Virus record (IMG/VR): IMGVR_UViG_3300009103_000001
Location: 124,001 to 188,000 of that record
Strand: one strand, 5' to 3'
DNA: 64,000 nucleotides
The notes below the pieces were generated by a model. That model was not told the origin of the DNA, did no database searches, and was given only the letters and a program-made list of their open reading frames with translations. Shown here piece by piece: positions 80 to 18,097 of this stretch; position 1 is the first letter of the stretch; each line of letters begins with the position of its first letter. Position numbers and translations under genes: made by a program.

Positions 80-892
80 TTATACGTTTTCTTCTTGCAT
101 ATATTTTATTCCCCTATCTTGTTTAAAATAACATTCTTTTTTAGCCGTATTAAACCAAAATCTAGCCTCTAAGGGGTCGATTTTTTCTTCACCATTATAA
201 TAATTAAAAAATAATGAATTTGGTCTCATATTTATTTTTTTATAACCAATCTTAGGTATGGTCATAATTTTTTTATCATAATATGTCATCCTTAAAAAGA
301 ATTCATAAATGAATTGTAGTTTAATACTAGGTTTCAAACCACTAATAGATTCAAAAGCTTCTTTTTTGTATATACCACCAGAAAATTGGAAGTTTGGAAA
401 ATTTAGTAATGAATCATTATCTAAGAAACCATGTCTATCTGAAAAATCTTTAGCCCAAACAGGTTCGTTTGTAAAATGTAAAAACTTACCTTCAACATTA
501 GCGTCTAACACTATAGGTAAAAATACATCTACATCATCATAGTGTTCAACATATTTATTAAAACTATCAAACCATATTTTAGAATATTCATCATCAACTT
601 CTAAAACAGAAAACCATTCTGTTTCGATTTTTGTTACACCGAAATTAATTTGTGAACAAAAATCAGTTTCACCATCATTTTCTACTATATCTAAAATATT
701 TTTTATTTTTTCATCAAAATCAAATTCATTGATTATATTTTTAGCATCACCATCTTTTGGTACAACTAATAAAAGTTTTTTAGGTAATACTTTTTGTTCC
801 CTAATACTACCAATAGCTTTAGCGAAATAATCTTTTTCATCTTCGTTTATTCTGTGTATTGGTATTATAACTGTTAAATCGTTTTTACTCAT
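80..892 (-). CDS. GT-A fold (family 2-like) glycosyltransferase
   Basis: N-terminal LTVIIPIH, acidic EVDD (DxD-like) motif and SGG motif; 270 aa. Confidence 0.7.
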   Translation of the reverse strand: MSKNDLTVIIPIHRINEDEKDYFAKAIGSIREQKVLPKKLLLVVPKDGDAKNIINEFDFDEKIKNILDIVENDGETDFCSQINFGVTKIETEWFSVLEVDDEYSKIWFDSFNKYVEHYDDVDVFLPIVLDANVEGKFLHFTNEPVWAKDFSDRHGFLDNDSLLNFPNFQFSGGIYKKEAFESISGLKPSIKLQFIYEFFLRMTYYDKKIMTIPKIGYKKINMRPNSLFFNYYNGEEKIDPLEARFWFNTAKKECYFKQDRGIKYMQEENV

Positions 893-899
893 TTTATAT

Positions 900-1979
900 T
901 TATTTTTGTTCTATTATTTCAGTTTCATTAAATTTCTCTAAACTAAGAGTAAATTCTTTAATAATTTTATTCCTTAAATTATCATAATATTCTTTAATAT
1001 TATTTTTTTGATTTTCTTCTGTGTAAGGCTCAACTGTTTTTTCCATTTCATCGTAAAGTTCTTTAGGTTCTAAATCTTCTAACCAAGCTTGAAAGTAATT
1101 ACCTAAAATATCTGTTATATTATTAACATTATTGGTCCACATACCATTTTTGTCTTCCATCCATTCTGGTACTAGATTAGGAACTTTACCTATAACTGGG
1201 ACACCACATTTCATTGATTCTAATGGAAATGTACCAAAACCTGATACATCATCAACCCAAATAGAAACACACGATTCAGATAAGTTTTTAGCAAATTTTT
1301 CTCTTGGCATTCCTCTTAAATCTCTAAAAGTAACCCATTTTAGGTGTGGGTATCTTATATAAAAACTTTTAAATATTTTAACAGTATCTCTTTGGTCTCT
1401 AGTAAAAATAGTTACGATAGGTTTTTTTGGTTTTTCATCCTTTTTAAAATATTCTGGTATAGATAATTTTACTATACCAACCTCCATATTAGGATTACCA
1501 AATAAACTTTCTACATATTCTTTTTGTTTATCAGAAGTTGTAATAACATCTCTAACATTATAATCAGCCCAAGTTTTACCTGGTTCTAACATTTCTAATA
1601 TATAATCATATGATTGTGACATAATCATTTTTCTACAAGGTAATTGTTTAATTTGTTCTAATATATTAGCAAAAATTTCTGGTACTATAACAACGTCAGA
1701 ACCACTAACTTTTAGTTGTTGTGATTCAATGGATAGGTGTGGTAGATTTGAATATTCTTCACCTAACCAAGTTACAACACTTGTATAATCATTTTTTTCA
1801 TGTAAAACATATGCTTTATATCCCAATTCATTTAACACTTTTACGTGTTCATATATGTTAGCCACACCGGCTGTGGGATTACCTTTAGTGTCCATAGTGA
1901 AAAAATATAAACCAAATTCTTTTTTTTCTAATTTAGATATATTTTCTTCAATTCTAGCTTTTATTTCATGTTGTTCCAT
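900..1979 (-). CDS. GT-B fold glycosyltransferase
   Basis: C-terminal GFGTFPLESMKCGVPVIG matches the GT-B E-x7-E/GxPV region; 359 aa. Confidence 0.7.
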   Translation of the reverse strand: MEQHEIKARIEENISKLEKKEFGLYFFTMDTKGNPTAGVANIYEHVKVLNELGYKAYVLHEKNDYTSVVTWLGEEYSNLPHLSIESQQLKVSGSDVVIVPEIFANILEQIKQLPCRKMIMSQSYDYILEMLEPGKTWADYNVRDVITTSDKQKEYVESLFGNPNMEVGIVKLSIPEYFKKDEKPKKPIVTIFTRDQRDTVKIFKSFYIRYPHLKWVTFRDLRGMPREKFAKNLSESCVSIWVDDVSGFGTFPLESMKCGVPVIGKVPNLVPEWMEDKNGMWTNNVNNITDILGNYFQAWLEDLEPKELYDEMEKTVEPYTEENQKNNIKEYYDNLRNKIIKEFTLSLEKFNETEIIEQK

Positions 1980-1981
1980 AT

Positions 1982-2332
1982 TTATTTTTTTAATATAAGT
2001 TTATTTTTTAATAATGTGTTAAATGAAAGTCTAAAGGGTATTGATAATTGATTTTCTAATTTTTTAAATCCCATACTTTCATCTATTATTCCATTTTCAT
2101 TTAATACTGTTTCTATCATAGCTTTAACAACTTCCCATTTTGCCATATCAATAAGTGGTCCATTGTAGTATTCTATTTTTTCATCTAAGTTATCTTCTTC
2201 TTCTTCAGTTTTTTTAATTTTTTTATTTAATAATTCGTCAATACTTTTTTCTTCATTGATTTTAATAAAATCTGAAAGTGCGTGAATATCTAAATAAAAT
2301 TTTTCACCTGCTAACTCAAATAAATCATTCAT
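1982..2332 (-). CDS. Hypothetical protein
   Basis: 116-aa ORF tightly packed in the operon. Confidence 0.6.
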   Translation of the reverse strand: MNDLFELAGEKFYLDIHALSDFIKINEEKSIDELLNKKIKKTEEEEDNLDEKIEYYNGPLIDMAKWEVVKAMIETVLNENGIIDESMGFKKLENQLSIPFRLSFNTLLKNKLILKK

Positions 2333-2374
2333 AATTAATTATTAATTATAATTATTTTTTTGTAAATGTTTTAA

Positions 2375-3052
2375 TTAATTAAAACGTTCTTCATTTACCT
2401 TTTTCAAAAAATCTGAGTCGATTTCTTTTATTGATTTTATACGTATACAAGATTGTGTGGTTTTTTTATTAAAGTCTTTATCTATTACTATATTTATTTT
2501 ACTAATAGATAATTTATTATTGATAATTTTAGGATGGTCGGTAACCATAACATCAACATAATCCCAAACTTTAGAATATTCTTTTACAAATTTTATATTA
2601 GGGCAAGTACACTTATTTTTAGATAGAAAAAATAGTGTTGACGGCACGGCTAACCCACCTTCCCTACTTATAATAATAAATTCATGTTCTGGATTATCAA
2701 TTATTAATTGATTTAATGTTTCCATAGCAGAAGAAACACTCTCATTAGCATAACCAAAAATTTCTAAGGCACATTTTTCATATAAAAATTCGTCTATTGT
2801 TGTGGTAGTTTTTGTACTCACTAATTCAGTAGTTTTTTCACTTTCTATAAAATCAGTTTCATTAAAGTTTGGGTCGAAACCTAATTCACTTTGTTGTGTT
2901 TCTTCTTCTGGAAATGTAATCCATTTCTCTAAATCATAATCAACCACCACAATAGGTTCTTTATCTTCTGAAGAAAAATATTTATCATGTGTTTCTTCTA
3001 TTTTTCCAAATAAATCCCTCAATACACCATCAATTGATATTCCTATTATCAT
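2375..3052 (-). CDS. HAD-like (5'-nucleotidase NT5C-like) protein with degenerate motif I
   Basis: Likely start MIIGISIDGVLRD at 3052 (the ORF track extends to 3094, overlapping phoH). xDGV motif lacks the first Asp; later IISRE and VMVTDHP motifs. Confidence 0.5.
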   Translation of the reverse strand: MIIGISIDGVLRDLFGKIEETHDKYFSSEDKEPIVVVDYDLEKWITFPEEETQQSELGFDPNFNETDFIESEKTTELVSTKTTTTIDEFLYEKCALEIFGYANESVSSAMETLNQLIIDNPEHEFIIISREGGLAVPSTLFFLSKNKCTCPNIKFVKEYSKVWDYVDVMVTDHPKIINNKLSISKINIVIDKDFNKKTTQSCIRIKSIKEIDSDFLKKVNEERFN

Positions 3053-3062
3053 TTTTTTAATT

Positions 3063-3821
3063 TTAATTTTCCAAGTCGTCAAAAACATGTTCAATAATCT
3101 TAATTATTGGGTTTCTAACTACATCATCTGGGTCTGTTAATGTTACAGTACCAAAATTATCTATATCTTTAAATTTATCTATAATAATTTCAAGAGAACT
3201 ATCTTTTTTATTTCTAATATCTTTTTGTCTAACATCACCTAGTATAACCATTTTCGAATTATTACCAATCCTGGTCATAAGTGTTCTTATATTTTCCATT
3301 GATATATTTTGACACTCATCAATTATGATAACAGAGTTATCAATACTTCTACCTCTAGCAAAGGCTATAGGTAAAACCTCTAAAAGACCTAATTCTTTTA
3401 GTTTTCTAGTTCTAGTTTTACCAATTAATTTTCTAAAATTATCCATAAAAGAGTCCACATATGGTTCCATTTTTTCTTCCATATTACCCTTAAGAAAGCC
3501 TATTTCTTCATTTTTAAGGGTTGTAACTGACTTAATTAAAACAATTCTTTTAAATTTAACAGTGTTTTTAAGTAATTTTAAAGCTTCAGCACAAGCTAAA
3601 AAAGTTTTTCCTGTCCCAGGTAAACCATTACATATAGTTATTTCATTTTTCTTTATCGATTCTGTTAATTTTTTTTGATTTTGTGTTTTATGTTTTACAT
3701 TAACTTTTATTAAATTGAATAATTTTACTTCTTCAATGTTGTTGTGATTTAATAATAATTCCAATTCCTCTAAGTCTTCTATTGGAAATTGTTTATTGTG
3801 TCTTCCGTTTTTTCTACTCAT
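3063..3821 (-). CDS. phoH: PhoH-family ATPase
   Basis: Walker A GLPGTGKT; IGFLKG, FARGRS, IIDECQN, LMTRIG and GDVRQKD motifs. Confidence 0.9.
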   Translation of the reverse strand: MSRKNGRHNKQFPIEDLEELELLLNHNNIEEVKLFNLIKVNVKHKTQNQKKLTESIKKNEITICNGLPGTGKTFLACAEALKLLKNTVKFKRIVLIKSVTTLKNEEIGFLKGNMEEKMEPYVDSFMDNFRKLIGKTRTRKLKELGLLEVLPIAFARGRSIDNSVIIIDECQNISMENIRTLMTRIGNNSKMVILGDVRQKDIRNKKDSSLEIIIDKFKDIDNFGTVTLTDPDDVVRNPIIKIIEHVFDDLEN

Positions 3822-4131
3822 CTAAAATATATTTATCATTTTTTATACTTGGCGTTTTTATTACCATTATTGAACAATCTTCAAGAACTTCAAATTCTGT
3901 AATCTCATTTGGATTTATGACCATTAATTCATTTTCATTACAAACAATTCCTGAATATTTTACCCTTCCATTTATAATAAAGTTTAACTCTGTTGCTACT
4001 TTATGTAAATGTTTTTCACCGATAAAACCTTTTTTATATTTTTTATATCCAACTTCAAATAAATCGGTTTTATATACAGATTCTTTAAATCCACCGATAA
4101 ACCATTCATTATTTATTTTCAATTTTTTCAT
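3814..4131 (-). CDS. Small cupin-fold protein
   Basis: HLHKVATE cupin-type metal motif, 105 aa, next to sugar-nucleotide genes. Confidence 0.55.
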   Translation of the reverse strand: MKKLKINNEWFIGGFKESVYKTDLFEVGYKKYKKGFIGEKHLHKVATELNFIINGRVKYSGIVCNENELMVINPNEITEFEVLEDCSIMVIKTPSIKNDKYILDE

Positions 4132-5168
4132 TATTTATTTTTTAAAATAGTATTCATAACCTCATTAGGAATACCAATAGTAATTTCCGATTCTTTATAA
4201 TAATCTAACCAATAAGAAACCATCTCATCTAACATTGATTCAAATGTGTATTTAGGTTTCCATCTTAAGTCTTCCCTTAATTTAGTAGAATCCCCCTTTA
4301 AATCATGTAATTCTTCAGGTCTCATATGTTTTTCATCAATCACTACATAATCTCTAAAATCTAAATTTAATCTATTAAAAGTATATTCACATAAATCCTT
4401 AACCGAATGTGAAATACCTGTCGCACATACATAATCATTAGGTTTATCATCTTGTAACATTAACCACATAGCTTCAACATAATCTTTAGCGTGACCCCAA
4501 TCCCTAGTGGCATCTAAGTTACCTAAGTGTAATTTTTCTTGTAATCCTAATTTAATCCTAACCGCTGCCTTAACAACTTTATTGGTAACAAAATTAGTTC
4601 CTCTTCTTGGTGATTCATGATTAAAAAGAATTCCGTTCCATATTTTCATACCATAAGAGTTTCTATAGTTTCTTGTAATATTATATGAAAATACTTTAGC
4701 ACACCCATATGGTGATACGGGATTCATGGGGGTAGTTTCTCTTTGATATCCATCCGCATCAATATTATTACCAAACATTTCAGATGAAGAAGCTTGGTAT
4801 ATTTTAGAATTAGGTGAAACCATTCTAACTGCCTCTAACATGTTTAAGGTACCTAGACCAGTTGCATTTGCAGTATAGATTGGTTGGTCAAAACTAACTC
4901 TTACATGTGACTGTGCTGCCAAATTATATATCTCATCAGGTTGTACTTTTTGTAGTACCCTAACTAAAGACGCCATATCAATTAAATCAGCGTATTCTAA
5001 TTTTAATTTATCAAAAATATGTTCAATTCTAACTGATTGTGTTTCTGATACAGAATTTCTTTTAACTATACCCCAAACTTCATATCCTTTATCTAAAAGT
5101 AGTTCGGCTAAATACGAACCATCTTGTCCATTAATCCCTGTTATTAAAGCTTTTTTACTCATATTCAT
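4131..5168 (-). CDS. gmd: GDP-mannose 4,6-dehydratase
   Basis: [61 protein letters not shown]. Confidence 0.95.
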
Positions 5169-6303
5169 TAATTATATTTACTATTTTATCTATATCTTTT
5201 TTTGATAAGTCTTGATGGTTTGGTATATAAAATCCTTTTTTATCTAATAATTCACAATTTTCTAACCCTTCTTTACTACCTTTCCACATAGGTTTATTTG
5301 CCATATTACCAGCGATTAAAGGTCTTACTTCTATATCTTCATCTAGTAAATTTCTAATTATATCATTTCTCATAGGATGTACTATTGGTATAGCAAAACT
5401 AGAAACATAATCGTTTGGTTTTTCTTCTAAGTGTAACTGACTAACCTTTAACTTGTCGATATAGTATTTAAAATTTTCCCTTCTTTTTGAAGAGTATCCA
5501 TCTAATTTATCTATGGCTCTTAAACCAATAAAAGCCTGCAAGTCGGTAGAGCGAAGATTCATACCTGGTAAATAAAAATTATACAAACCATCAAAGTCTG
5601 AACAACCATAAGATTCTCTAATGTCTTTTTGTACATCTGAAGGCAAGTCTCTATCCCATCCATGACTTCGCATCATTAGTAATTGGTGGTAAAACCCTTC
5701 ATCATTAGTATTAATAAAACCACCTTCAATAGTGGATAAATGATGACCAAAATACATTGAATAAAAGGAGGCAAAACCAAAAGAACCTAAATATTTTTCT
5801 TGATACTTAGAACCCATACTCTCACAGACATCCTCTAATAATATTACCTGGTATTTTTTACATAAATCAACAACTTTTTCCATATTAGGCACTAACCCCA
5901 AAGGGGATACTAAAATAAATGTAGAAGGGTTTTCTCGTTGAAATATTGATTCTAGTGCCTCTAAATCACATGATAAATCTGATAAGTTACAGTCACACAT
6001 AAAAGTGTCGTAACCTAAAAGCATTGGGGAACTAACGTCTGTAGACCAACTCAGAGCAGGAACAACAATTTTTAAATTTTTTAATCTATTAGTTTCTTTA
6101 AGGGTTGCCAATGTAAGTAATATAGAAGAAGAACCTGAGTTGACAAAAACTGAATATTTAGTTCCTATTTTTTTTGCCCATTTTTTTTCTAACTCCCAAG
6201 TCAATTCGCCCTTTGTAAGTCTAGGTATTTCATCTTGATTGAGCCATTTTGTTAAAGCTTTAATATCCGCTTTATCTATTGTATCACTTACTAATTTTAT
6301 CAT
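5155..6303 (-). CDS. colD: DegT/DnrJ-family PLP enzyme, ColD-type GDP-4-keto-6-deoxymannose 3-dehydratase
   Basis: VNSGSS, EDVCES; [13 protein letters not shown] has His where aminotransferases have the catalytic Lys; lies between gmd and an fcl-like gene. Confidence 0.75.
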
Positions 6304-7217
6304 AATCTAACCTTTCCCGTTTTATAATTTTCTATAAACCAATCTATAGTCTTATTAATTCCTTCTTCTAAGGGGGTAAAATCAAACCAATCTATATCAC
6401 TTTTAGCCGGTTTTCTTAATTGACCTAACGGTTTCGTTATATCATATTTAATTCTATTCTCTGATATATCAAATCTTTTGGCTATAATATTAACAACTTC
6501 TTTAATTGAGTACTCTTTTTCATTTATAGCCATTAAAGGTTTATCACTACCCCACTCATTAATAGCCCATTCTATTATTTCTGACATATCTTCAGAATAT
6601 ACAAATTGCCTAAGTGGGCTACCATCACCCCAAACAATAAAATCGGTATCATTAATTTTAGATTCATAAGCTTTTCTTATTAAAGCTGGTACTAAATGAG
6701 AGTCCTTTAAATTAAAATTATCTTTTGGTCCATATAAATTTGTGGGTACGATTGATATCCAATTTTTATTTATCACATTACGATACATTTTAGTTTGGTA
6801 ATATAATAATCTTTTAGCGTAAGCGTAACCATGATTAGAGAAATGTGGTGGCCCTAAATCTATTTTTTCAGAAGTTAAAGGGTATTCTACTTTATCTGGA
6901 AAAACACATGTAGATAATATTGTAACTAAGTTTTCTATATTTAAATCTAAACAAGAGGATAAAACATTATTATCTATTTTAATATTATCACTAAAAAACT
7001 CTAAATTAGAATTTATATTAGCCCCAACACCACCAACTCTAGCCGCACAGTGTATTATTGTATTTGGGTTATATTCATTATTTAATATAAAATCTTTAAA
7101 ATTATTAACTCTTAAATCACAATCTTTACTAGAAAAAGTTTTTGCTTTTAATTTTTTTACTATTGGTGAACCTAATAAACCATTTCCACCAGTCACTAAA
7201 ACACTCATTTTACACAT
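6300..7217 (-). CDS. GDP-L-fucose synthase / ColC-like epimerase-reductase
   Basis: VTGGNGLLG, HCAARVGG, LSTCVFP, YAYAKR, PTNLYGPKDNF, WGDGSPLRQF. Confidence 0.85.
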   Translation of the reverse strand: MCKMSVLVTGGNGLLGSPIVKKLKAKTFSSKDCDLRVNNFKDFILNNEYNPNTIIHCAARVGGVGANINSNLEFFSDNIKIDNNVLSSCLDLNIENLVTILSTCVFPDKVEYPLTSEKIDLGPPHFSNHGYAYAKRLLYYQTKMYRNVINKNWISIVPTNLYGPKDNFNLKDSHLVPALIRKAYESKINDTDFIVWGDGSPLRQFVYSEDMSEIIEWAINEWGSDKPLMAINEKEYSIKEVVNIIAKRFDISENRIKYDITKPLGQLRKPAKSDIDWFDFTPLEEGINKTIDWFIENYKTGKVRL

Positions 7218-7735
7218 TCAATATTTAAACTCATTAATCGACCATTTTCTTTATCCATATGTGGTATATAGGCTTGTGAAAAATCATCCATATCAGAGTG
7301 GTCAGTTTTCCTCCAATCATACCTATAAACTTCACTAAAACCTAACGATTTTAAAGAGTTTTGTAAAGAGTTAAAATCCCATGTACAATAATGAAAATTT
7401 TGTTCATAATTTTGTCCCCCATATAAAAACCCCATTAATTTAGTTAGGTCCTTATTGTCATTATAGTACTCAACAACTTTTTCAAAATCTGGTACAGCAA
7501 TTCTTAATATGCCTCCATTTTTTAACACTTCAAACCATCTTTTTAGAACTTTTTTATATTCATGTCTACCAAAATGTTCTAAAACATGACAAGCATAGAT
7601 TACATCGACACTATTATTATTAACATTATTTAATTTAGCTATATCGTCAACGAGGTCGGGGTTAACGTCCTCTCTAATATCTATATTAATATAACCCTTT
7701 ATTTTTTTGTCACCACAACCTAAATGTAATTTCAT
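7205..7735 (-). CDS. Class I SAM-dependent methyltransferase (type 11-like)
   Basis: KLHLGCG, HVLEH, LKNGGILRIAVPD. Confidence 0.8.
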   Translation of the reverse strand: MKLHLGCGDKKIKGYINIDIREDVNPDLVDDIAKLNNVNNNSVDVIYACHVLEHFGRHEYKKVLKRWFEVLKNGGILRIAVPDFEKVVEYYNDNKDLTKLMGFLYGGQNYEQNFHYCTWDFNSLQNSLKSLGFSEVYRYDWRKTDHSDMDDFSQAYIPHMDKENGRLMSLNIECVK

Positions 7736-7741
7736 TTTTAA

Positions 7742-8590
7742 CTAGTTTGATAATATTTTAGCTATTTCAGCATAAGTACTTATTTCGTGATATATTTGTA
7801 TATTTGTTTTACTTAAAATATATAAATCTTCTATCGCTTCTTTTGAATGTTTCTCATCTCTAATAAATGTTTTATGGTTCCATGGTTGATTATTATTTTT
7901 TTCTATATAATTTTTTTTATCGTTTCTAACAATTATATTATTTTTAAACTTATTAACTATTAATTTTTCGTATTCTTTGTCCTCAGTTGATAAATAAAAC
8001 ATCTGTTTTGGTGTTTGTTTTAAAATATTGTTTATTTTATCAATATAGTAATTAACAGTAACTAGACCTTGTTTAAAATCAGAGCCTCTAGCGTGTACAC
8101 CAATAACACTTTTATCTAATTTTAAATCTTTAACCACTTGGTCAACATTATCTTGTAATTCTTTTTTTAGTTTTAATTTTCTTAAAAAATTATAAGATTC
8201 TGTTAAATCAATATTAGGTAAAAATCTAATATTATATACAATTATATTTTTATTTTGGTCTTGAAAGGAAAAAGAATTTTTACCACTAGCCCCAAATTTA
8301 TGGGTTAAATTTTGTAAAGTAGGGACACCAAACTCTGAATTTTCTCTATTAACATCAAATTGTTCAACACACATCTTACAATCGTCTAATTGTTCCAATT
8401 CTTCTAAACTTATAGTTTCTATTGGGTCATCGAATAAATCATTAAATTTAGCTAAACAACCGTTTTGTTGTTTATTATCCCAATATATTTTTAATTTTCT
8501 ACCAGTTTTTTCGGATATTACACCACAAGAAGCTATTGTTCTCATCCTATTACCAATGCCTGCTGTACAATATGGTATTATTGTATTCAT
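7742..8590 (-). CDS. NodZ/GT23-like O-fucosyltransferase-fold protein
   Basis: Likely start MNTII at 8590 (ATGA overlap); AGIGNRM, IGVHARGSDF, FYLSTED and DLYILS motifs. Confidence 0.65.
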   Translation of the reverse strand: MNTIIPYCTAGIGNRMRTIASCGVISEKTGRKLKIYWDNKQQNGCLAKFNDLFDDPIETISLEELEQLDDCKMCVEQFDVNRENSEFGVPTLQNLTHKFGASGKNSFSFQDQNKNIIVYNIRFLPNIDLTESYNFLRKLKLKKELQDNVDQVVKDLKLDKSVIGVHARGSDFKQGLVTVNYYIDKINNILKQTPKQMFYLSTEDKEYEKLIVNKFKNNIIVRNDKKNYIEKNNNQPWNHKTFIRDEKHSKEAIEDLYILSKTNIQIYHEISTYAEIAKILSN

Positions 8591-9183
8591 TTTTCTACTA
8601 CAATATAAGGTAAACCGGTTAAAGGAACTGAGCCCCACTCATATACTTTACCATATTCAGATAATTTTTGTAACCACCATGGTTTTGGTTTTATCGTTAA
8701 GTGTAAAGGTACTCCCGCTAAATTATCTGGTATAAAAGCTACAGAGACAATAAAACCTTTAGTAGATACACGGTCAAATTCTTTTAAAACAATATTTAAA
8801 TCATTTTCAGATATGTGTTCCAAACAATCAAAAGAAGTTACCCAATCAATTGTATTATCATTTAAAGGTATTGTCGTACCATTACCATCAATAAACTCTA
8901 TTTTATCATTATCTATAACATTTCCTGTTGCGACTGATGCTATATCTAACCCATATACTTTTTCTATTGTTTTAGTGGCTAAATCACAAAATCTACCATA
9001 ACCACATCCATAATCAATAACACATTTAGCATTTTTATTATTTAAGAATTGTATTGAATTTTCACCCCAATTAGCTCTACCATAACCACCATCTACTTGA
9101 CCCCTTGAGTCTGATTTAACATATATGTCATGTAATTTACCACTATATAAATCTACATATTTTTCTTTTTCTGTTTTATACAT
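8587..9183 (-). CDS. Class I SAM-dependent methyltransferase
   Basis: IDYGCGYG, GLDIA, SFDCLEHI. Confidence 0.8.
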   Translation of the reverse strand: MYKTEKEKYVDLYSGKLHDIYVKSDSRGQVDGGYGRANWGENSIQFLNNKNAKCVIDYGCGYGRFCDLATKTIEKVYGLDIASVATGNVIDNDKIEFIDGNGTTIPLNDNTIDWVTSFDCLEHISENDLNIVLKEFDRVSTKGFIVSVAFIPDNLAGVPLHLTIKPKPWWLQKLSEYGKVYEWGSVPLTGLPYIVVEK

Positions 9184-9188
9184 AATTT

Positions 9189-9854
9189 TTAAAAATTTTT
9201 CTTTTGTCCGGCTGTTGGGTCATATCCCCATTTTCTTATAAATTCAGCTCTATTATGTCCCAATATTTTATCGGACCTATCACCATTGGCATAAATTTCT
9301 ATACCATGGTTTACTAATGTATTTTCATTACCATTAACAACTATTATACCCTGTTTTTTATATTCATTACCCAAATCATGGTCCTCAAACCCATAGTAAC
9401 CATCATAACAATCGTCAAACAAACCAATTCTTTTAATTAAATCCAACCTTAAACCTAAATTTGCGGTACTAAACCACCCACCAGCTCTAGCACCATCAGG
9501 AAATCTAACAATACCCCTAACAACTTCATGTTTTTTTAATTCATCAATATAAGATTGCACAAAATTTATATTTGAGGGGATACAATCATCGTCCATAATA
9601 ACCACATTTGGTGAAACACAAAGAGAAACAGATTCGTTAAATCTACCAACCCTATGATACCCATCATCTTTATTTAATATTAGTTTAGTAATAACTTGTG
9701 GTAAACCATTAAAATTAATATCTTTAGAACCATCATCATTAATGATTAAATTAAAGTTCATATTAGTTTGTTTACTTAAAATATCTAAAGTTTCTTTTAT
9801 TTTATCCCATCTATTATAAGTGGTTATACATATATCTAATTCTTTTATTTTCAT
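9189..9854 (-). CDS. Glycosyltransferase family 2
   Basis: ICITTYNR, INDDGS, MDDD, YGFEDHDLG. Confidence 0.8.
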   Translation of the reverse strand: MKIKELDICITTYNRWDKIKETLDILSKQTNMNFNLIINDDGSKDINFNGLPQVITKLILNKDDGYHRVGRFNESVSLCVSPNVVIMDDDCIPSNINFVQSYIDELKKHEVVRGIVRFPDGARAGGWFSTANLGLRLDLIKRIGLFDDCYDGYYGFEDHDLGNEYKKQGIIVVNGNENTLVNHGIEIYANGDRSDKILGHNRAEFIRKWGYDPTAGQKKNF

Positions 9855-9856
9855 TT

Positions 9857-10450
9857 TTATTTTTTTATATATACTGCTACACCAGCACCATTATTTATTG
9901 GTGTTGTATGTATTAATTTAAAGTCAAATTTATTAACATAATTTGTTATATCTTCTAAACTAGCATCACCTTCATATAATTCACTATTTATGAATTCTAT
10001 AATAACAGAATCTATAAATTTTAACCTATCACCAAAACCCGATAATACTTTAACTTCATAACCTTGTGTGTCACTAACAATAACATTGTAATTATCCATA
10101 TTATAATCCAAAGAATCGAATCTAACAATTTCAGATTCTATTTCCTCATTAAATGTTATATTATAATATTTTAAATGATTTAATGGTTTTAGAAATGAAG
10201 ATGATTCACCATTATTAGAGGCAACATACATTTTTAATTTTTCGTTTTTATCACCTAAACCTAAATTATGTGATTCGATATTTGGGTGGTCTCTTTTTAA
10301 TATATTATAGACATTAGGTACTGGTTCGAAACAGACAATATTTTGTGTGTAGGTTTTAAATAAATTACACTCTTGGCCTACATTAGCTCCGGCTTGTATG
10401 ATACCTTTTATATTAATATATTTAGTTATTAGATTAAAAATTTCTTTCAT
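9857..10450 (-). CDS. FkbM-family methyltransferase
   Basis: GANVGQE, FEPVP, DTQGYEVKVLSG. Confidence 0.85.
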   Translation of the reverse strand: MKEIFNLITKYINIKGIIQAGANVGQECNLFKTYTQNIVCFEPVPNVYNILKRDHPNIESHNLGLGDKNEKLKMYVASNNGESSSFLKPLNHLKYYNITFNEEIESEIVRFDSLDYNMDNYNVIVSDTQGYEVKVLSGFGDRLKFIDSVIIEFINSELYEGDASLEDITNYVNKFDFKLIHTTPINNGAGVAVYIKK

Positions 10451-10451
10451 A

Positions 10452-11771
10452 TTAAAACCCTATTTTTTCGTTTTCCGTAAAGGGGAAATTATTTTTCTTT
10501 AAATAAAAATAAAGAACAGATTTATAATGTGAATTCTTTATATCATTTTTTAACCATAAAAATTCTTGTATAACATCTAAATCTAAAAAAGGGTATCTAG
10601 TTTCTATACCATAAGAACCAGCCACATACTCTTCTTTAGCTAAATAAGACTCCATTGAACTATTGAAGAAACTTGGCCAAGGATAAATTGTTGATAAATC
10701 TTTTGGGAATAACCCACCAAAATTACTATGATTATATTTTTTCACACCACCAAAACCGTAATCAGAAAAAATTTCATCAGCACCTTGTCCTGATAATAAT
10801 ATTTTTTTATCGTCTTTTATCGCATGACTACAAACATGTGATAAATGTTTTGCTCCATTATCATTTATTAATGATAACCAATATTCATTATAATTACTAG
10901 AATTAGAATATGTCACAAATTTAAATGGTTCTGTATTCTTTTGTATATAATTATAAGCGGTAGATACTTCACCTGGGTTTTTTGTTAACGATTGTTGTTC
11001 GTTTCCGTTTAATAAACTAAACCTACTATTTAAAATATTATTATTTTCAGTACCTATAACAGTGTAAGATTTAAATGGTATTTTTTGATTTAATAATTCA
11101 CAACAAATAGCTCCACTATCATAACCCCCACTTAACCCAATAAAAATTTTTTCTCTAATACCTTGTACACGTTTTTTTATAGAATTTTCAAAAGATTTAA
11201 TCCAATCATCACAATTATCTTTGTGTTGGTTATTAATATCAAATTCATGTACTTTATTTTTTTGTATAATTTTTTTTGACACTAAATCTATAATTATACT
11301 GGTATTTGGTTCCATTTTTTTTACATCTGTATGACCTAATTTTATTAATGGGTCACCATAAGAAGCACAACCTAAATTATTATCACCAGTACAATAAAAA
11401 ATTGGTTTTGTTTTAAAGGTATCGGTTGAAAACAATACTTTATTTTTAGATAAATCTACTAATACTATAGCAAACTCACCATCTAATTTTTTAACAAAAT
11501 CAAAACCATGTTTTTTATATAAGGGTATTAAACATTCACCGTCTGATTTATAATCACCATAATTATAAATCTCACCATTATATAAACAAATAATATTATT
11601 TTCTATAAATGGTTGAATTGTAAAGTTACCAGTAATACTTAATAGATTATGTATAAATGTTAACCCACTTATATTTACCATATTTGTTTTATCTGGTCCT
11701 CTAAATTTAGTATAAAAATTTATCTTATCTAAATCATTAACTTTTTTATTTGTAAAAATAAAACTACACAT
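10452..11771 (-). CDS. Asparagine-synthase-like glutamine amidotransferase
   Basis: N-terminal MCS (Ntn Cys), RGPD, YNGEIYN, LDGEFA, LSGGYDSG, SGQGADEIF, RYPFLD. Confidence 0.85.
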   Translation of the reverse strand: MCSFIFTNKKVNDLDKINFYTKFRGPDKTNMVNISGLTFIHNLLSITGNFTIQPFIENNIICLYNGEIYNYGDYKSDGECLIPLYKKHGFDFVKKLDGEFAIVLVDLSKNKVLFSTDTFKTKPIFYCTGDNNLGCASYGDPLIKLGHTDVKKMEPNTSIIIDLVSKKIIQKNKVHEFDINNQHKDNCDDWIKSFENSIKKRVQGIREKIFIGLSGGYDSGAICCELLNQKIPFKSYTVIGTENNNILNSRFSLLNGNEQQSLTKNPGEVSTAYNYIQKNTEPFKFVTYSNSSNYNEYWLSLINDNGAKHLSHVCSHAIKDDKKILLSGQGADEIFSDYGFGGVKKYNHSNFGGLFPKDLSTIYPWPSFFNSSMESYLAKEEYVAGSYGIETRYPFLDLDVIQEFLWLKNDIKNSHYKSVLYFYLKKNNFPFTENEKIGF

Positions 11772-11774
11772 ATA

Positions 11775-12425
11775 TTAAAAATTATAGTTAAATAATTTAA
11801 TATCTTTATTATAGAGTTTTTCTGTTAAATGTTTTGTTACATTAGTGTGTAATTCTCTATAGTTATCACATTTATTTGTAACATTTAATTTTAATAACTT
11901 GGTTATTGGTATATTTAATTTGTGAAACATATTATTAAAGTCTTCCTCTAAATTTTCATATCTAAGTAAATAATCTACAGTTAATTTATCGTTATCATAA
12001 ATATATGGGTGTTGTTCATCATAACCTCTATTCATTTTAGAGTATATATGTGGACTATGAGATAATACTTTAGTCCAATTTTCAAAGTTACCAACACTCT
12101 TAACTAAATCAAATAACTCGTGTTTAGGCCTATCTGGTACGATTTGTCCGTTATTTAATTTAAACGGTGTAATGCTATTATTAACATTATCAAACCAAAA
12201 ATTTTTATCAGATAATATATAATAATAATTAGAAACTAATCTATCCCATGGGTTTCTAATTACAGCGAATTTTGTATAAATGTCCCATTCTTTTGGGTAT
12301 TTTTTCTTTAGTTCTTTACAGGTGTAATGGCCAGAATCTTCCATAGAAAAAGTTTCCTGTATTGAGGTTCCAGCTGTTTTTGGTATATGAATAAAAATTA
12401 ATTTATGTTTATGTGATATTGGCAT
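11775..12425 (-). CDS. Sulfotransferase (family 2-like)
   Basis: 5'-PSB motif FIHIPKTAGTS and 3'-PB motif RNPWDRLVSNY. Confidence 0.85.
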   Translation of the reverse strand: MPISHKHKLIFIHIPKTAGTSIQETFSMEDSGHYTCKELKKKYPKEWDIYTKFAVIRNPWDRLVSNYYYILSDKNFWFDNVNNSITPFKLNNGQIVPDRPKHELFDLVKSVGNFENWTKVLSHSPHIYSKMNRGYDEQHPYIYDNDKLTVDYLLRYENLEEDFNNMFHKLNIPITKLLKLNVTNKCDNYRELHTNVTKHLTEKLYNKDIKLFNYNF

Positions 12426-12436
12426 TTTTTAATTTT

Positions 12437-13108
12437 TTATTGTCCTTTATATCTTACCTGTGGCATTATAGGGTTAGCGTTTAACCCACCATTAGCATAA
12501 CCAGGTAATAATTTTGGTGTTATGTTTGTTTTCCATAGAACAAATGGCATACTTATTTGGTCTCTGGATGAGAATCTACAAATTTGTTCCCACCACCTTA
12601 AATTTAAAACTTTTATATTATCAGTGTTTTTTCTAATACTTACAGGTAATTCATATAAATTATTGTTTTCAGGATAACCAATAGATTTATAATATTGTAT
12701 TTGATTATCCACAAGTTCTTTATGGTCATAATTTAATTGATTTATAATATTAGCCTCTTTATATGCACAATTTCTATCAGTATGTTTCCATAGACCAATT
12801 TCAGAATCACCTAAATATTTTTCTATAATCTCTTTAGGGTGCATAATAACTTCATGTGTTGAGTCAACCCAAAACCAATAATCATATTCTGGTAAAAACA
12901 TTTGAGGTAAAACTTTATAAATTTTAGCATTTCTTCTACCATTAAACCTATTATCTAGTGTAAAATTTAAAGCATCCCTTTGTTCCCAAACACTACAATC
13001 ATGTTTTTTGTCAACAAACGCGATATAATCCACATCATCAAAGTTTACCGATGGGTCTTTAAGTTTAGTATTAAGACCAAATAATGAAGTTAATATAACT
13101 ATTTTCAT
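12437..13108 (-). CDS. DUF616 (TOD1/MUCI70-like) glycosyltransferase-like protein
   Basis: KIYKVLPQMFLPEYDYWFWVDS, HTDRNCAYKEA, RDQISMPFVLWK. Confidence 0.7.
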   Translation of the reverse strand: MKIVILTSLFGLNTKLKDPSVNFDDVDYIAFVDKKHDCSVWEQRDALNFTLDNRFNGRRNAKIYKVLPQMFLPEYDYWFWVDSTHEVIMHPKEIIEKYLGDSEIGLWKHTDRNCAYKEANIINQLNYDHKELVDNQIQYYKSIGYPENNNLYELPVSIRKNTDNIKVLNLRWWEQICRFSSRDQISMPFVLWKTNITPKLLPGYANGGLNANPIMPQVRYKGQ

Positions 13109-13470
13109 TTATTTTCTAATTTTTTTAATTTTTCCTTTAAATCTTTTAATTGCTTTTTAAAACCATTCATGGTCCAACCGTCTAAATGATTTTTATTTTT
13201 ACCCTTACCCTCTAATATCTCACGTTCTAAAGTTTTTATTCTATTTTTAATTTTAGATATTTCACCATTATTTTTAATACTAATAAATTCATTAAATAAC
13301 ATTTCATTACCAAAACTATCAACAACTTCTATAAGATTAACCATATTTGGGTATTCGGATAAATATTGTTTTATAAATTTTAAACCCATACCTTCTTTAA
13401 AGGTATTCTCTTTTTGTTCGCCTAAATAATAAAAATTATTTTTTTTAGTTTGTTTTATATAATATTTCAT
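13105..13470 (-). CDS. Hypothetical protein
   Basis: Likely start MKYYIKQ at 13470 (the ORF track starts at 13512); C-terminal coiled coil. Confidence 0.5.
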   Translation of the reverse strand: MKYYIKQTKKNNFYYLGEQKENTFKEGMGLKFIKQYLSEYPNMVNLIEVVDSFGNEMLFNEFISIKNNGEISKIKNRIKTLEREILEGKGKNKNHLDGWTMNGFKKQLKDLKEKLKKLENK

Positions 13471-14374
13471 TTTCAATCCCTTTCTTATATTTTTTAACCC
13501 AATCAATAACATTACCTTTAGGGCTCCATTTTAGTTTATTTTTAATTTTACTATTATCGGCTAATGTTTTAAATGGTTCCACTCTTTTTTCACCATAAAT
13601 TTTTTCACATTCAAATAAATTAGCTATTTCATTAACACTATAGTTATCACCATTACCAACGTTTAAAATATCACCACTAAAATTCATTGGATGTATAGCG
13701 GATAAGTAATTAGCCTCAACTATGTCACCAACATAAGTGAAATCTCTTCTTTGTTCACCATCATTAGTGATAGTTAAAGGTTTATTTTCCCTATATTGTT
13801 TACCGAATATGCCAATAACAGTACAATAAGCACCCTCATCTAACATTCTTTCACCGTATACATTAAAATATCTTAATGATACCGTATCTAACCCATATAG
13901 TTGACTAAATAGTGTACAATATTGTTCACCTATTAATTTTTGTAATCCATAAGGGCTCATCGGGTTTGTTGGGTGTGTTTCTGGTGTTGGAAATATTTCG
14001 GTGTCACCATAAGCTGATGATGATGCACTATATATAAAACGTTTTACTTTAGCATCTTTAGCCGCAACTAACACATTTAATGTACCATTAACATTATTGG
14101 TATTAAAACTTATTGGGTCTTCTATTGATGGTTGTACTCTAGCAGATGCCGCTAAATGAAAAACATAGTCACAACCCAACATAATATCATATATTTTCTT
14201 CTTATTTAATTCATCACTTATATCTAAATTATATAATTTAGCTTTAGGATTATTATTTTCAATTTTACCTGTAGATAAATTATCTATAATTCTTACTCCC
14301 CAACCTAAATCTATTAATTTATCTACTAAGTTACTGCCGATAAATCCGGCTCCACCTATTACAATTGCTTTCAT
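13445..14374 (-). CDS. NAD-dependent sugar-nucleotide epimerase/dehydratase (UDP-Glc/GlcNAc 4-epimerase-like)
   Basis: GGAGFIGS, FHLAA, SASSSAYG, YGLQK (YxxxK), LRYFNVYG, RDFTYVGD. Confidence 0.85.
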   Translation of the reverse strand: MKAIVIGGAGFIGSNLVDKLIDLGWGVRIIDNLSTGKIENNNPKAKLYNLDISDELNKKKIYDIMLGCDYVFHLAASARVQPSIEDPISFNTNNVNGTLNVLVAAKDAKVKRFIYSASSSAYGDTEIFPTPETHPTNPMSPYGLQKLIGEQYCTLFSQLYGLDTVSLRYFNVYGERMLDEGAYCTVIGIFGKQYRENKPLTITNDGEQRRDFTYVGDIVEANYLSAIHPMNFSGDILNVGNGDNYSVNEIANLFECEKIYGEKRVEPFKTLADNSKIKNKLKWSPKGNVIDWVKKYKKGIENEILYKTN

Positions 14375-15123
14375 AATTTATATCTTTTTAAGTATTTTTC
14401 ATATATTAATGGGTCTTGTTTTTCAACATACTCATCTATTTCTTTTTCTGTTTTATTATTTAACCAAGTCTCCTTTTGTATTTTTAACTTTTTTGGGTCA
14501 CCATCAGTAGCAGTAGTACCATGTAATCTTTTATACATATTCATGGATATTTTTTTATGTTCAACAATATTATCAATAAAATTATTTAACAAATTTTCAT
14601 CATCATTACCACCAAATTGTATTAACCATAAAAATAATTTATTTAATTCTTTTTGTGTGTTTAAAATTAAATCGTCATAATCAATTAAGATTTTTGGTCC
14701 ATCATATTTATCATATAATTGTAACATAGCTAAATAATCTGGTGAATTATTTTGGTTTTTAAGACCATTTAAAGCTATTTTAATATCTGTAATGGGGTGT
14801 ATTTGTGGGTATTTTGGTTTATTTGGGGCGTCCCTTAATATACTTTCTTTATAGTTACGAATATTAAGTAACAAACCTTCTTTGTTTGTATTATTTGTAA
14901 ATAAATCACACACTAATTTACCACCGTGTGTTTTATGTATTACAGCTCTTGGGTCTGATTCTAACCTACGTTCAACACCAACATCACCAATATGTCCATC
15001 AGAACCAATTACATTAAAACAACTTATTTTTTCAATACAATAAGATAACCAATTACTACCAGAACGTGGGTATGAAAAAAGTGTTACTTTTCTTTTATTA
15101 GATGTTCTTTCATATAATCCCAT
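14371..15123 (-). CDS. Sulfotransferase-domain protein
   Basis: SYPRSGSNW P-loop-like 5'-PSB motif, KTH and IRNYKE motifs. Confidence 0.7.
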   Translation of the reverse strand: MGLYERTSNKRKVTLFSYPRSGSNWLSYCIEKISCFNVIGSDGHIGDVGVERRLESDPRAVIHKTHGGKLVCDLFTNNTNKEGLLLNIRNYKESILRDAPNKPKYPQIHPITDIKIALNGLKNQNNSPDYLAMLQLYDKYDGPKILIDYDDLILNTQKELNKLFLWLIQFGGNDDENLLNNFIDNIVEHKKISMNMYKRLHGTTATDGDPKKLKIQKETWLNNKTEKEIDEYVEKQDPLIYEKYLKRYKL

Positions 15124-15124
15124 T

Positions 15125-15904
15125 TTATTTATTTTTAATTAAATTATTTATTTCAGTTTCAACTCTTTTATGAAAGTCGTAATATTGTTTAGACTTTTCA
15201 TAATTTTCTTCTAAAATATCATAAACACTATCATAAAAATCTGGTGTTAAATTATTTAATATTTTATCTAATTCATCGATATTATTAAACTGTATAATAC
15301 CTTTATCGTTAAAAAATTCTCCTATATTAGGACATCCCCAATAAATAGGTATTGTTTTTGTGGCAAAACAATCTATTACTTTTTCAGTCACCCAATTTTG
15401 TTTAGATGTATTTTCAACCACTATATGATATTTTGCGTTTTCAAATAAAGTATTTTTAGATTCTATTCTTGGTGGTGTTTTAAACCTTTTAAAATTAAAA
15501 CCATTTATGTTATCTAAACCACCATATATATCCCATATGGCGTGCCTTAATTTATGTCCAGGTGCTTGATTTTTATTACTCATAATAAAAGATATCTCAT
15601 TAGTTTTGTTTAATTTTAAATTATCAAAATCAACCCAACAAGTACCAAAAATAAATTTTTTAGAATTTTCACATTCATTTAATATTCTATCATCCCAAGC
15701 CAAAATTAAATCAAAATTATTTTTATTATTAATAATGTGTGGTGATATATTAATAATTTCAGGCGGTTCTATTTGTACGGCAACCTTTATTTCTGAATTT
15801 TTATTATGTTGTATAGTATCTATAGATAAACTAACATCTTTACTATATAAAGTTTCTGGTCTTAAGTGACCAAAAGATTTAACTTGTATTAAATTCTCAC
15901 CCAT
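15125..15904 (-). CDS. GT10-like (alpha-1,3/4-fucosyltransferase-type) glycosyltransferase
   Basis: YHIVVEN...WVTEKVIDCF...TIPIYWG matches the alpha-3 motif. Confidence 0.75.
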   Translation of the reverse strand: MGENLIQVKSFGHLRPETLYSKDVSLSIDTIQHNKNSEIKVAVQIEPPEIINISPHIINNKNNFDLILAWDDRILNECENSKKFIFGTCWVDFDNLKLNKTNEISFIMSNKNQAPGHKLRHAIWDIYGGLDNINGFNFKRFKTPPRIESKNTLFENAKYHIVVENTSKQNWVTEKVIDCFATKTIPIYWGCPNIGEFFNDKGIIQFNNIDELDKILNNLTPDFYDSVYDILEENYEKSKQYYDFHKRVETEINNLIKNK

Positions 15905-16659
15905 TTTTCTGGTATTAAATCATTTGTGTTATGTGATATCGCTTGGCCGAACCATTTTTTTGGTGCGATTACTTTTTTATTATTATTTTTATTTAACCAT
16001 GCTCCCCACCAACTAAAAGAAGAATTAGCTATTATATTATTTTTACATAATGACATTAACCATAGTTCAACGTAATCATCATTATCATCGATAAAAATAA
16101 AATTATCCCCATCAAAAACATCCTTACACCAATCAATATCATCCGAAAAAACCAAGTATTTAGTATCCTTTTCAAATAAACCTATGGCTCTATTATAGTA
16201 ACCTAGATTACACGTTGGGTGGTGATTAGTTAGACCTAAATAATCACCTCTTCTAACATGTATTGAACATGTTTCTTCACCTAATATATTATTATATTTT
16301 TTTTCTATTTTATCTAAAGAATTTTTATCAATACTATATAAGTCTAAAATTTTTTCACGGTTATTTAAAAAATATTTTTCACTTTGGTAATATCCGTGTA
16401 GTTTTATATTGGTTTTATATGGTATTTTTTGATAATGGAAGAATGGTTCAGAATACGTATTTTTAATAGGTAAAGGTGTCTCAACAAATTTTATATTACG
16501 TAATATGTTATTTTTATAACTTGATATTGGTTCGTGTACTCTTAAACAATCATTTATATTAAAAATTAATTCATCATCATTATCTAAAGCTAAAGAATAG
16601 GCAGAAGTTATTTGAAACATATAATTACCTAACCCACCTAATAAATTTGATGTTACCAT
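15889..16659 (-). CDS. GT11 alpha-1,2-fucosyl/colitosyltransferase
   Basis: GGLGNYMFQ, GYYQSEKYF, SIHVRRGDY, IANSSFSWWGAWL. Confidence 0.9.
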   Translation of the reverse strand: MVTSNLLGGLGNYMFQITSAYSLALDNDDELIFNINDCLRVHEPISSYKNNILRNIKFVETPLPIKNTYSEPFFHYQKIPYKTNIKLHGYYQSEKYFLNNREKILDLYSIDKNSLDKIEKKYNNILGEETCSIHVRRGDYLGLTNHHPTCNLGYYNRAIGLFEKDTKYLVFSDDIDWCKDVFDGDNFIFIDDNDDYVELWLMSLCKNNIIANSSFSWWGAWLNKNNNKKVIAPKKWFGQAISHNTNDLIPEKWVRI

Positions 16660-17354
16660 ACCTCATGTTTAATTTTAACGTGATTTATTTCTTGTTGTAA
16701 ACTTCTTGTATACATAGAACTAACTTGGTATTGATGCATTCTATTACTTATTAATACATCTTTAACTATAAAAGGTAAACCATATTTCTTATATAATTGA
16801 TAATAATACTCACAATCCATTAACATAACTAAATCTTCATCAAATAATGGTATATCATTATTTTTAAAAGAAAGTACTGATGGTGAACTTATAGTATTAA
16901 CACCTTCTAAAATTTTATCATTCCAACTAGGTACCATTTCTCTATTAAAGGTTTTGCCATCATTAGTGTGGTTACACCCACTAACTAACCAATTACAATC
17001 ATTATTTTTAAATGTATCATTTATTATTTGTAATGACTCATCATTAACAAATAAATCATCTTGAAACATAACTTTAATTATATCACCAGTGGCGTTCTTA
17101 ATACTAACATTTGTATTAGCAGGCCCATTACCTCTTTTATCTATATTTTTAATATAGATAATATCAAAAAAATTACGATATTCATCAATTAAATTAAGTA
17201 TATCATTACCAACACTATGGTCTGATATAACTACATTAAAATTTTTATATGTTTGTCTTTTTATCGTGTCAAACATTTCATTTAAAAAAGTAACACCATA
17301 TCCGTGTTGTTCCCATGTTGGTATACATATTGATATTTTTAAATCCAATTCCAT
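16653..17354 (-). CDS. Glycosyltransferase family 2
   Basis: ISICIPTW, VISDHS, MFQDD, MDCEYY. Confidence 0.8.
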   Translation of the reverse strand: MELDLKISICIPTWEQHGYGVTFLNEMFDTIKRQTYKNFNVVISDHSVGNDILNLIDEYRNFFDIIYIKNIDKRGNGPANTNVSIKNATGDIIKVMFQDDLFVNDESLQIINDTFKNNDCNWLVSGCNHTNDGKTFNREMVPSWNDKILEGVNTISSPSVLSFKNNDIPLFDEDLVMLMDCEYYYQLYKKYGLPFIVKDVLISNRMHQYQVSSMYTRSLQQEINHVKIKHEVW

Positions 17355-18097
17355 GTTTTTATGTGTTTCTCTAGTTGTTCTTTATTCATATTATTTATTT
17401 TATGAAATTCTTGGCCATTAAACTGATAAAATGGGTTTTGGTCTGAACTGTTTGGTGTTCTGTGATGTGTTAAATGATATAAATCACCATTAGTTCTACA
17501 CATTTCATGGCCCATTTTTTGTACTCTAACAATTCTTTCCCAATCCTCATGACCCCAAGAAATAAAGTTTTCATTCTCCCAACCAATACTACCATATCTG
17601 TTTTTATCAAAAAAGAAAGCACCACCAACCGAATTTGGGTTGAATAATGTACATTCATTTAATGGTATTTCGTCCAGTTTATTTGATTCTACTTTATCAA
17701 AAAACTTTTTTGGTATATCATAAAATTTACCAGCATAAGGAAAACACATTGTACAACCATTTAATACTTTTTCTTTACAATCGATATAGTCTTGTACTTT
17801 AAAAATAACATCAACATCATAATTAACTATTATATCTGTTTTAGCCATTTTAGTCATATTATTTAATAATCTTGTTCTATGAAATAGTTTTTCATCATTT
17901 TTTTCAAAAACATATACTATTTTTTTTGATACTGAATTTACAAAATCTTCATTAGATTCTTTATCACTATCTAAAACAATAATATTTGTGTCAAAATTTT
18001 TTAATAAATAATTCATAGATAGTTTAAAATTTATTCTCCTATCATCTGAATCAAATCTTACTGGTACTATAAATGTAACGTCTTTAAAGTTTATCAT
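17339..18097 (-). CDS. GT-A glycosyltransferase (GT2/GT7-like)
   Basis: TFIVPVR, NYDVD, WENENFISWGHEDWE, LYHLTH. Confidence 0.75.
   Translation of the reverse strand: MINFKDVTFIVPVRFDSDDRRINFKLSMNYLLKNFDTNIIVLDSDKESNEDFVNSVSKKIVYVFEKNDEKLFHRTRLLNNMTKMAKTDIIVNYDVDVIFKVQDYIDCKEKVLNGCTMCFPYAGKFYDIPKKFFDKVESNKLDEIPLNECTLFNPNSVGGAFFFDKNRYGSIGWENENFISWGHEDWERIVRVQKMGHEMCRTNGDLYHLTHHRTPNSSDQNPFYQFNGQEFHKINNMNKEQLEKHIKTWNWI

What the first reader, a model, noticed from the sequence alone, without database searches (positions are those of the whole stretch)
4131..7217. Apparent complete GDP-L-colitose pathway in a phage
Seen: gmd, a PLP enzyme with [10 protein letters not shown], and an Fcl-like reductase in one overlapping run. 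Established: ColD and E1-type 3-dehydratases replace the aminotransferase Lys with His, and Gmd-ColD-ColC makes GDP-colitose, a 3,6-dideoxy fucose mimic of some O-antigens. Inference: the phage makes colitose, possibly as well as fucose, rather than perosamine.
Basis: partly seen in the sequence, partly recalled or inferred. Interest (0 to 1): 0.65.

Follow-up and report, generated by a model that had tools for sequence, protein, structure and literature searches.

The report
Phage colitose-type deoxysugar gene module
An uncultured marine phage carries three adjoining genes that should turn GDP-mannose into the rare sugar colitose (3-deoxy-fucose), and probably fucose as well. The middle gene is an add-on found in many ocean phages, but the last enzyme is an ordinary fucose synthase, not the known colitose synthase.

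Summary
On the minus strand, 4131-5168 is a GDP-mannose 4,6-dehydratase. 5155-6303 is a ColD-type PLP enzyme whose [10 protein letters not shown] motif puts His187 on the catalytic His188 of E. coli ColD. 6300-7217 is an Fcl-family epimerase/reductase. The genes overlap by 14 and 4 nt, in the colC-colD order of E. coli O55.

The first two steps are well supported, so GDP-4-keto-3,6-dideoxy-D-mannose is the expected intermediate. The last step is inferred. The reductase is not an orthologue of ColC: 29% identity to both E. coli ColC and Fcl, best matches to eukaryote-type GDP-fucose synthases. It is the only Fcl-family gene in the 210 kb record.

In about 190 related viral loci the same slot holds one of two kinds of reductase. 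One clade always sits beside a His-type 3-dehydratase. The other, Fcl-type clades, which include the window's enzyme, occur with or without ColD, and reductases 89% identical are found in both states. ColD therefore looks like a cassette added to a phage gmd-fcl fucose module.

The cultured cyanophage ACG-2014f has the same trio, annotated only generically. I found no paper on virus-encoded colitose synthesis. Best reading: GDP-colitose plus GDP-fucose, confidence about 0.6. It needs biochemical testing.

The parts
4131..5168 (-). gmd: GDP-mannose 4,6-dehydratase, step 1, giving GDP-4-keto-6-deoxy-D-mannose
   Evidence: PF16363 414 bits and TIGR01472 414.2 bits against a cut-off of 415. The top PDB hits are all GMDs, 312-347 bits. 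It is 46% identical to the E. coli O55 O-antigen Gmd, and the S/T-x-E, Y-x3-K and NHESPRRG motifs are kept.
5155..6303 (-). ColD-type PLP/PMP-dependent GDP-4-keto-6-deoxy-D-mannose 3-dehydratase, step 2. The catalytic His187 codon is at 5743-5745.
   Evidence: The best PDB hit is E. coli ColD 2gms (200 bits, E 5e-58). E1 scores 97 bits and perosamine synthase 86 bits. It is 33% identical to E. coli O55 ColD over its full length. GHH aligns with ColD S187-H188-H189. It has no Fe-S Cys insert. The His is kept in all close homologues examined.
6300..7217 (-). Fcl-family (GDP-L-fucose synthase type) epimerase/4-reductase. It is the only candidate for step 3 (ColC role) and probably also makes GDP-L-fucose.
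   Evidence: PDB hits: Naegleria GDP-fucose synthase 253 bits, human 225 bits, E. coli Fcl 131 bits. NCBIfam Fcl scores 182 bits, below the cut-off of 500. It is 29% identical to both E. coli ColC and Fcl. The equivalents of Ser107, Cys109, Tyr136, Lys140 and His179 are present. It is the only Fcl-family gene in the record. It falls in clade II of the reductase tree.
7205..7735 (-). Small SAM-methyltransferase-like protein, overlapping the reductase gene. It may methylate the sugar or the glycan.
   Evidence: PF08241 at 6e-8, matching the C-terminal part of the domain only. The same 176-aa gene sits upstream of the reductase in L038 and L039.
7742..8638 (-). NodZ-like (GT23-like) candidate fucosyl/colitosyl transferase; weak assignment
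   Evidence: PF05830 scores 25 bits, below the cut-off of 28.3. Homologues lie near the module in L052, L054, L070 and L102.
15125..15904 (-). GT10-like candidate alpha-1,3-fucosyl/colitosyl transferase
   Evidence: PF00852 C-terminal domain, 28 bits. It recurs next to the module in many related loci.
15889..16659 (-). GT11 transferase, the family of alpha-1,2-fucosyl and colitosyl transferases; likely user of the GDP-sugar
   Evidence: PF01531 at 95 bits. It is 33% identical (139 bits) to the E. coli O55 GT11 gene in the colitose O-antigen cluster, and scores 106 bits against the O126 fucosyltransferase. It recurs next to the module in relatives.
80..19623 (-). Surrounding glycan-building island. 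It holds GT2 genes, a GT1-like gene, phoH (3063-3821, a synteny anchor), three methyltransferases, an AsnB-like amidotransferase, sulfotransferases, a TOD1/MUCI70-like GT and a GalE/WbpP-like 4-epimerase (13445-14374).

Best explanation
The three genes are a phage-borne nucleotide-sugar module that works on host GDP-mannose. Step 1, shown by homology: Gmd makes GDP-4-keto-6-deoxy-D-mannose. Step 2, strongly inferred: the ColD-type enzyme uses His187 in place of the aminotransferase lysine, with PMP regenerated from glutamate, to remove the C3 hydroxyl. This gives GDP-4-keto-3,6-dideoxy-D-mannose. Step 3, inferred from context only: the single Fcl-type enzyme epimerises C5 and reduces C4 with its normal stereochemistry. 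Since colitose is 3-deoxy-L-fucose, the product would be GDP-L-colitose. The same enzyme most likely still converts the Gmd product directly to GDP-L-fucose, so the phage would make a mixture whose ratio is set by ColD activity. The neighbouring GT11, GT10-like and NodZ-like transferases would then put these L-deoxysugars on a glycan made during infection. Whether that glycan is host envelope or virion is unknown. In evolutionary terms, ColD is an add-on cassette to a widespread phage gmd-fcl module.
For: Family and structure matches for all three enzymes come. The catalytic His aligns, and the Fe-S insert is absent. The genes are coupled by overlaps and lie in the colC-colD order of E. coli O55:H7. 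No other Fcl-family gene is present, and the third SDR is a GalE/WbpP-type UDP-sugar epimerase. The reductase-ColD-gmd-phoH order is conserved in 29 ColD-seeded viral loci and in many of 80 reductase-seeded loci. All five members of the window's reductase subclade are ColD-linked (99 SH-aLRT). Fcl-type reductases 89-90% identical occur with and without ColD, in phage segments 90.7% identical at the DNA level. This implies that the same enzyme serves both situations. Several distinct Fcl-family reductase lineages sit beside ColD-type genes: the three phage clades, the bacterial-type Fcl of ACG-2014f and E. coli ColC. GT11 enzymes accept GDP-Col and GDP-Fuc alike (PMC11987014), so no new transferase is needed. 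ColD's chemistry and the His-for-Lys hallmark are described in PMC8987622.
Against: The reductase is not a ColC orthologue. At the D-N-F motif (E. coli Fcl Asn172) it keeps Asn, whereas E. coli ColC and 73 of 105 dehydratase-dedicated phage reductases have Lys. I found no published test of an Fcl acting on the 3-deoxy intermediate. Most ColD-bearing relatives use a different, dedicated reductase clade, so the Fcl-type may be a poorer partner, or none at all. The window enzyme is only 33% identical to E. coli ColD. A close ColD homologue in C. jejuni acts on a GDP-heptose (PMC10440746), so sugar specificity is not fixed by family membership. There is no expression or product evidence.
Confidence: 0.6

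Rival explanations
1. Fucose is the only finished product. The Fcl-type enzyme makes GDP-L-fucose only. The ColD product is a dead end, a drain on the host's GDP-mannose or GDP-fucose pool, or is finished by an unrecognised or host enzyme.
For: The reductase looks like a normal Fcl in every respect tested. It is 63-66% identical to reductases of plain gmd-fcl pairs. Most ColD-bearing phages use a different reductase clade that is always dehydratase-linked.
Against: ColD is kept intact and is coupled by overlapping reading frames to this reductase. The five-member subclade is entirely ColD-linked, in three different gene orders. No other candidate reductase exists in the 210 kb record. A dead-end keto-sugar is an unlikely thing to conserve.
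Confidence: 0.17
2. A 3,6-dideoxyhexose other than colitose is made. For example, the reductase might reduce C4 without C5 epimerisation, or with the other stereochemistry at C4.
For: In C. jejuni, different reductases turn the same ColD-type product into four stereoisomers (PMC10440746 abstract). The enzyme's behaviour on a 3-deoxy substrate is untested.
Against: The Cys/His epimerisation pair and the Ser-Tyr-Lys triad of Fcl are intact. The default expectation is therefore Fcl's usual course, which gives the L-xylo sugar, colitose.
Confidence: 0.1
3. The PLP enzyme is an aminotransferase, and the module makes a GDP-4-amino sugar such as perosamine.
For: It belongs to the DegT family. The literature warns that pairwise similarity alone does not separate dehydratases from aminotransferases (bioRxiv 10.1101/2021.09.04.459008). 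Gly replaces ColD Ser187.
Against: The Schiff-base Lys is replaced by His, the hallmark of the 3-dehydratases. ColD scores more than twice as high as perosamine synthases. Ser187 is not conserved among characterised dehydratases.
Confidence: 0.04
4. The substrate is a GDP-heptose and the product a 3,6-dideoxyheptose, as in the C. jejuni HS:5 capsule.
For: ColD homologues 62-67% identical to E. coli ColD do this in C. jejuni.
Against: The dehydratase matches GDP-mannose dehydratases throughout. The C. jejuni route uses a separate cupin C5-epimerase and a separate reductase, not an Fcl-type enzyme. The neighbouring transferases belong to fucosyltransferase families.
Confidence: 0.03

Closest known systems
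GDP-L-colitose pathway of E. coli O55/O111, Salmonella O35 and Yersinia pseudotuberculosis (Gmd, ColD, ColC)
   Same: The first two enzymes belong to the same families, with the catalytic His in ColD. The reductase-then-dehydratase gene order with a 4-nt overlap is the same as colC-colD in E. coli O55:H7. A GT11 transferase is in the cluster.
   Different: The window ColD is only 33% identical. The reductase is not a ColC orthologue but a eukaryote-type Fcl. manB, manC, wzx and wzy are absent. The genes sit in a virulent-type myovirus genome and not in an O-antigen locus.
GDP-L-fucose synthesis genes of viruses (gmd plus GMER/fcl in chloroviruses and T4-like cyanophages)
   Same: It is a gmd-fcl pair carried by a virus as part of a glycan island. 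Many sister loci of this phage family have exactly that pair and no ColD.
   Different: Here a ColD-type 3-dehydratase is inserted between the two genes, which should divert the shared intermediate to a 3,6-dideoxy sugar.
C. jejuni HS:5/HS:11 GDP-3,6-dideoxyheptose pathway (PMC10440746)
   Same: It combines a GDP-sugar 4,6-dehydratase with a ColD-type PLP 3-dehydratase.
   Different: It uses a heptose substrate, a separate cupin epimerase and a separate reductase. The window has a single bifunctional Fcl-type enzyme.
E1 (RfbH/DdhC) CDP-6-deoxy-L-threo-D-glycero-4-hexulose 3-dehydrase
   Same: It is a His-for-Lys 3-dehydratase of the same superfamily. E1-type genes occur in the same slot in some related phages.
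   Different: The window enzyme lacks the Fe-S Cys insert, scores 97 bits against E1 versus 200 bits against ColD, and has no E3-type reductase partner.

Membership tests
GDP-mannose 4,6-dehydratase (Gmd) | Family-model match at the equivalog level | tested here: met
   PF16363 scores 414 bits against a cut-off of 27. TIGR01472 scores 414.2 bits against a cut-off of 415, which is 0.8 bit short. All top PDB hits are GMDs.
GDP-mannose 4,6-dehydratase (Gmd) | Catalytic Thr/Ser-Glu and Tyr-x3-Lys residues | tested here: met
   In the alignment with E. coli O55 Gmd, SSSE aligns with STSE, and SPYGCAK with SPYAVAK. Residue roles are from my own knowledge of E. coli GMD.
[quoted passage not shown] | DegT/aspartate-aminotransferase fold type I, closest to ColD among solved enzymes | tested here: met
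   ColD 200 bits, E1 97 bits, perosamine synthase 86 bits.
[quoted passage not shown] | Histidine in place of the PLP-binding lysine (His188) | tested here: met
   His187 aligns with His188. The H188N and H188K mutant entries fix the column.
[quoted passage not shown] | No [2Fe-2S] cysteine motif, which separates ColD from E1 and SpnQ | tested here: met
   The Cys-rich insert seen in the E1-like protein of L098 is absent. The criterion is taken from PMC8987622.
[quoted passage not shown] | Acts on the GDP-linked product of Gmd | not testable with these tools
   This is inferred only from the overlapping gmd gene and its conserved linkage.
[quoted passage not shown] | Ser187 next to the His | tested here: not met
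   Gly186 occupies this position. The literature says Ser187 is not conserved among characterised dehydratases, so this is a weak criterion.
ColC (GDP-L-colitose synthase) | Fcl-family SDR with a Ser-Tyr-Lys triad and a Cys/His epimerisation pair | tested here: met
   The equivalents of S107, C109, Y136, K140 and H179 are present. Residue roles are from my own knowledge of E. coli GMER.
ColC (GDP-L-colitose synthase) | Orthology with characterised ColC | tested here: not met
   The window enzyme is 29% identical (141 bits) to E. coli ColC and 29% (145 bits) to E. coli Fcl, whereas ColC and Fcl are 39% identical to each other. In the tree it falls among Fcl-type rows.
ColC (GDP-L-colitose synthase) | Lys at the D-N-F motif, a candidate marker shared by E. 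coli ColC and the dehydratase-dedicated phage clade | tested here: not met
   The window has Asn167. The marker is my own observation and is not an established criterion.
ColC (GDP-L-colitose synthase) | Genetic linkage to ColD | tested here: met
   There is a 4-nt overlap with the ColD gene, and the whole subclade is ColD-linked.
GDP-L-fucose synthase (Fcl/GMER/GFS) | Closest to characterised fucose synthases, with relatives in plain gmd-fcl pairs | tested here: met
   PDB hits are 253 bits (Naegleria) and 225 bits (human). Relatives 61-66% identical sit in gmd-fcl pairs without ColD. The NCBIfam Fcl equivalog scores 182 bits, below its cut-off of 500. That model appears to be tuned to the bacterial type.

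The most novel reading that the evidence does not exclude
Marine phages carry the first virus-encoded route to a 3,6-dideoxyhexose, and they do it in a modular way. A ColD (or E1-type) 3-dehydratase cassette is repeatedly gained or lost beside a gmd-fcl fucose module. Ordinary fucose synthases and GT11 transferases are loose enough about the C3 hydroxyl that one inserted gene changes a fucosylated glycan into a colitosylated one. This would be a one-gene switch for glycan diversification in the phage-host arms race. It would also mean that bona fide Fcl enzymes are latent colitose synthases.
Probability: 0.45. Interest if true: 0.65.

Novelty: new variant of a known kind. Interest (0 to 1): 0.55.

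Why it matters
Colitose is known as a rare bacterial O-antigen sugar and a mimic of fucose. A virus-encoded route has not been described in the literature I could search. Here it turns out to be common. More than 120 protein clusters at 74% identity or above were found in ocean metagenomes. There are dozens of IMG/VR contigs. The cultured cyanophage ACG-2014f also has the genes, labelled only 'aminotransferase' and 'nucleotide-sugar epimerase'.

If the model holds, three things follow:
- It adds 3,6-dideoxy sugars to the repertoire of phage auxiliary metabolism.
- It gives a natural experiment on how a pathway is extended by one cassette, with near-identical phages that have or lack ColD.
- It predicts that common fucose synthases accept 3-deoxy substrates, which would be useful for making GDP-colitose enzymatically.

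It also shows that database labels for these phage genes are too generic.

Tried and rejected
- **E. coli DNA search:** blastn of the ColD gene against E. coli genomes found nothing. I reached E. coli O55 ColD and ColC by walking the CB9615 chromosome instead.
- **Genome-contig scan:** a scan with the single ColD protein gave only one real relative, a 20 kb contig binned as Saprospiraceae that looks like a phage fragment. It tells us nothing about the host.
- **Second reductase:** I considered whether the third SDR (13445-14374) could be the ColC-type reductase. I rejected this because it is a GalE/WbpP/WbgU-type UDP-hexose 4-epimerase.
- **Clade I sampling bias:** I first read clade I reductases as 'always ColD-linked' from loci that had been fetched with ColD itself. 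That is circular. I repeated the test with a search seeded on the reductases, and the result held: none of the 76 informative loci lacks a His-type dehydratase.
- **GT11 specificity:** similarity to the O55 GT11 gene (139 bits) versus the O126 gene (106 bits) is too close to tell colitosyl from fucosyl specificity.
- **Host clues:** there are no tRNAs in the window and no psbA in the record. The tail sheath and DNA polymerase have only distant (25-34%) relatives among cultured phages. The host remains unknown.
- **Papers:** Cook & Holden 2007 (PMC2533848) is not held, so the sugar-binding residues of ColD could not be checked one by one.
- **Not run:** no structure prediction, complex prediction, read mapping or large profile search was run, because the sequence evidence left no question that they would settle.
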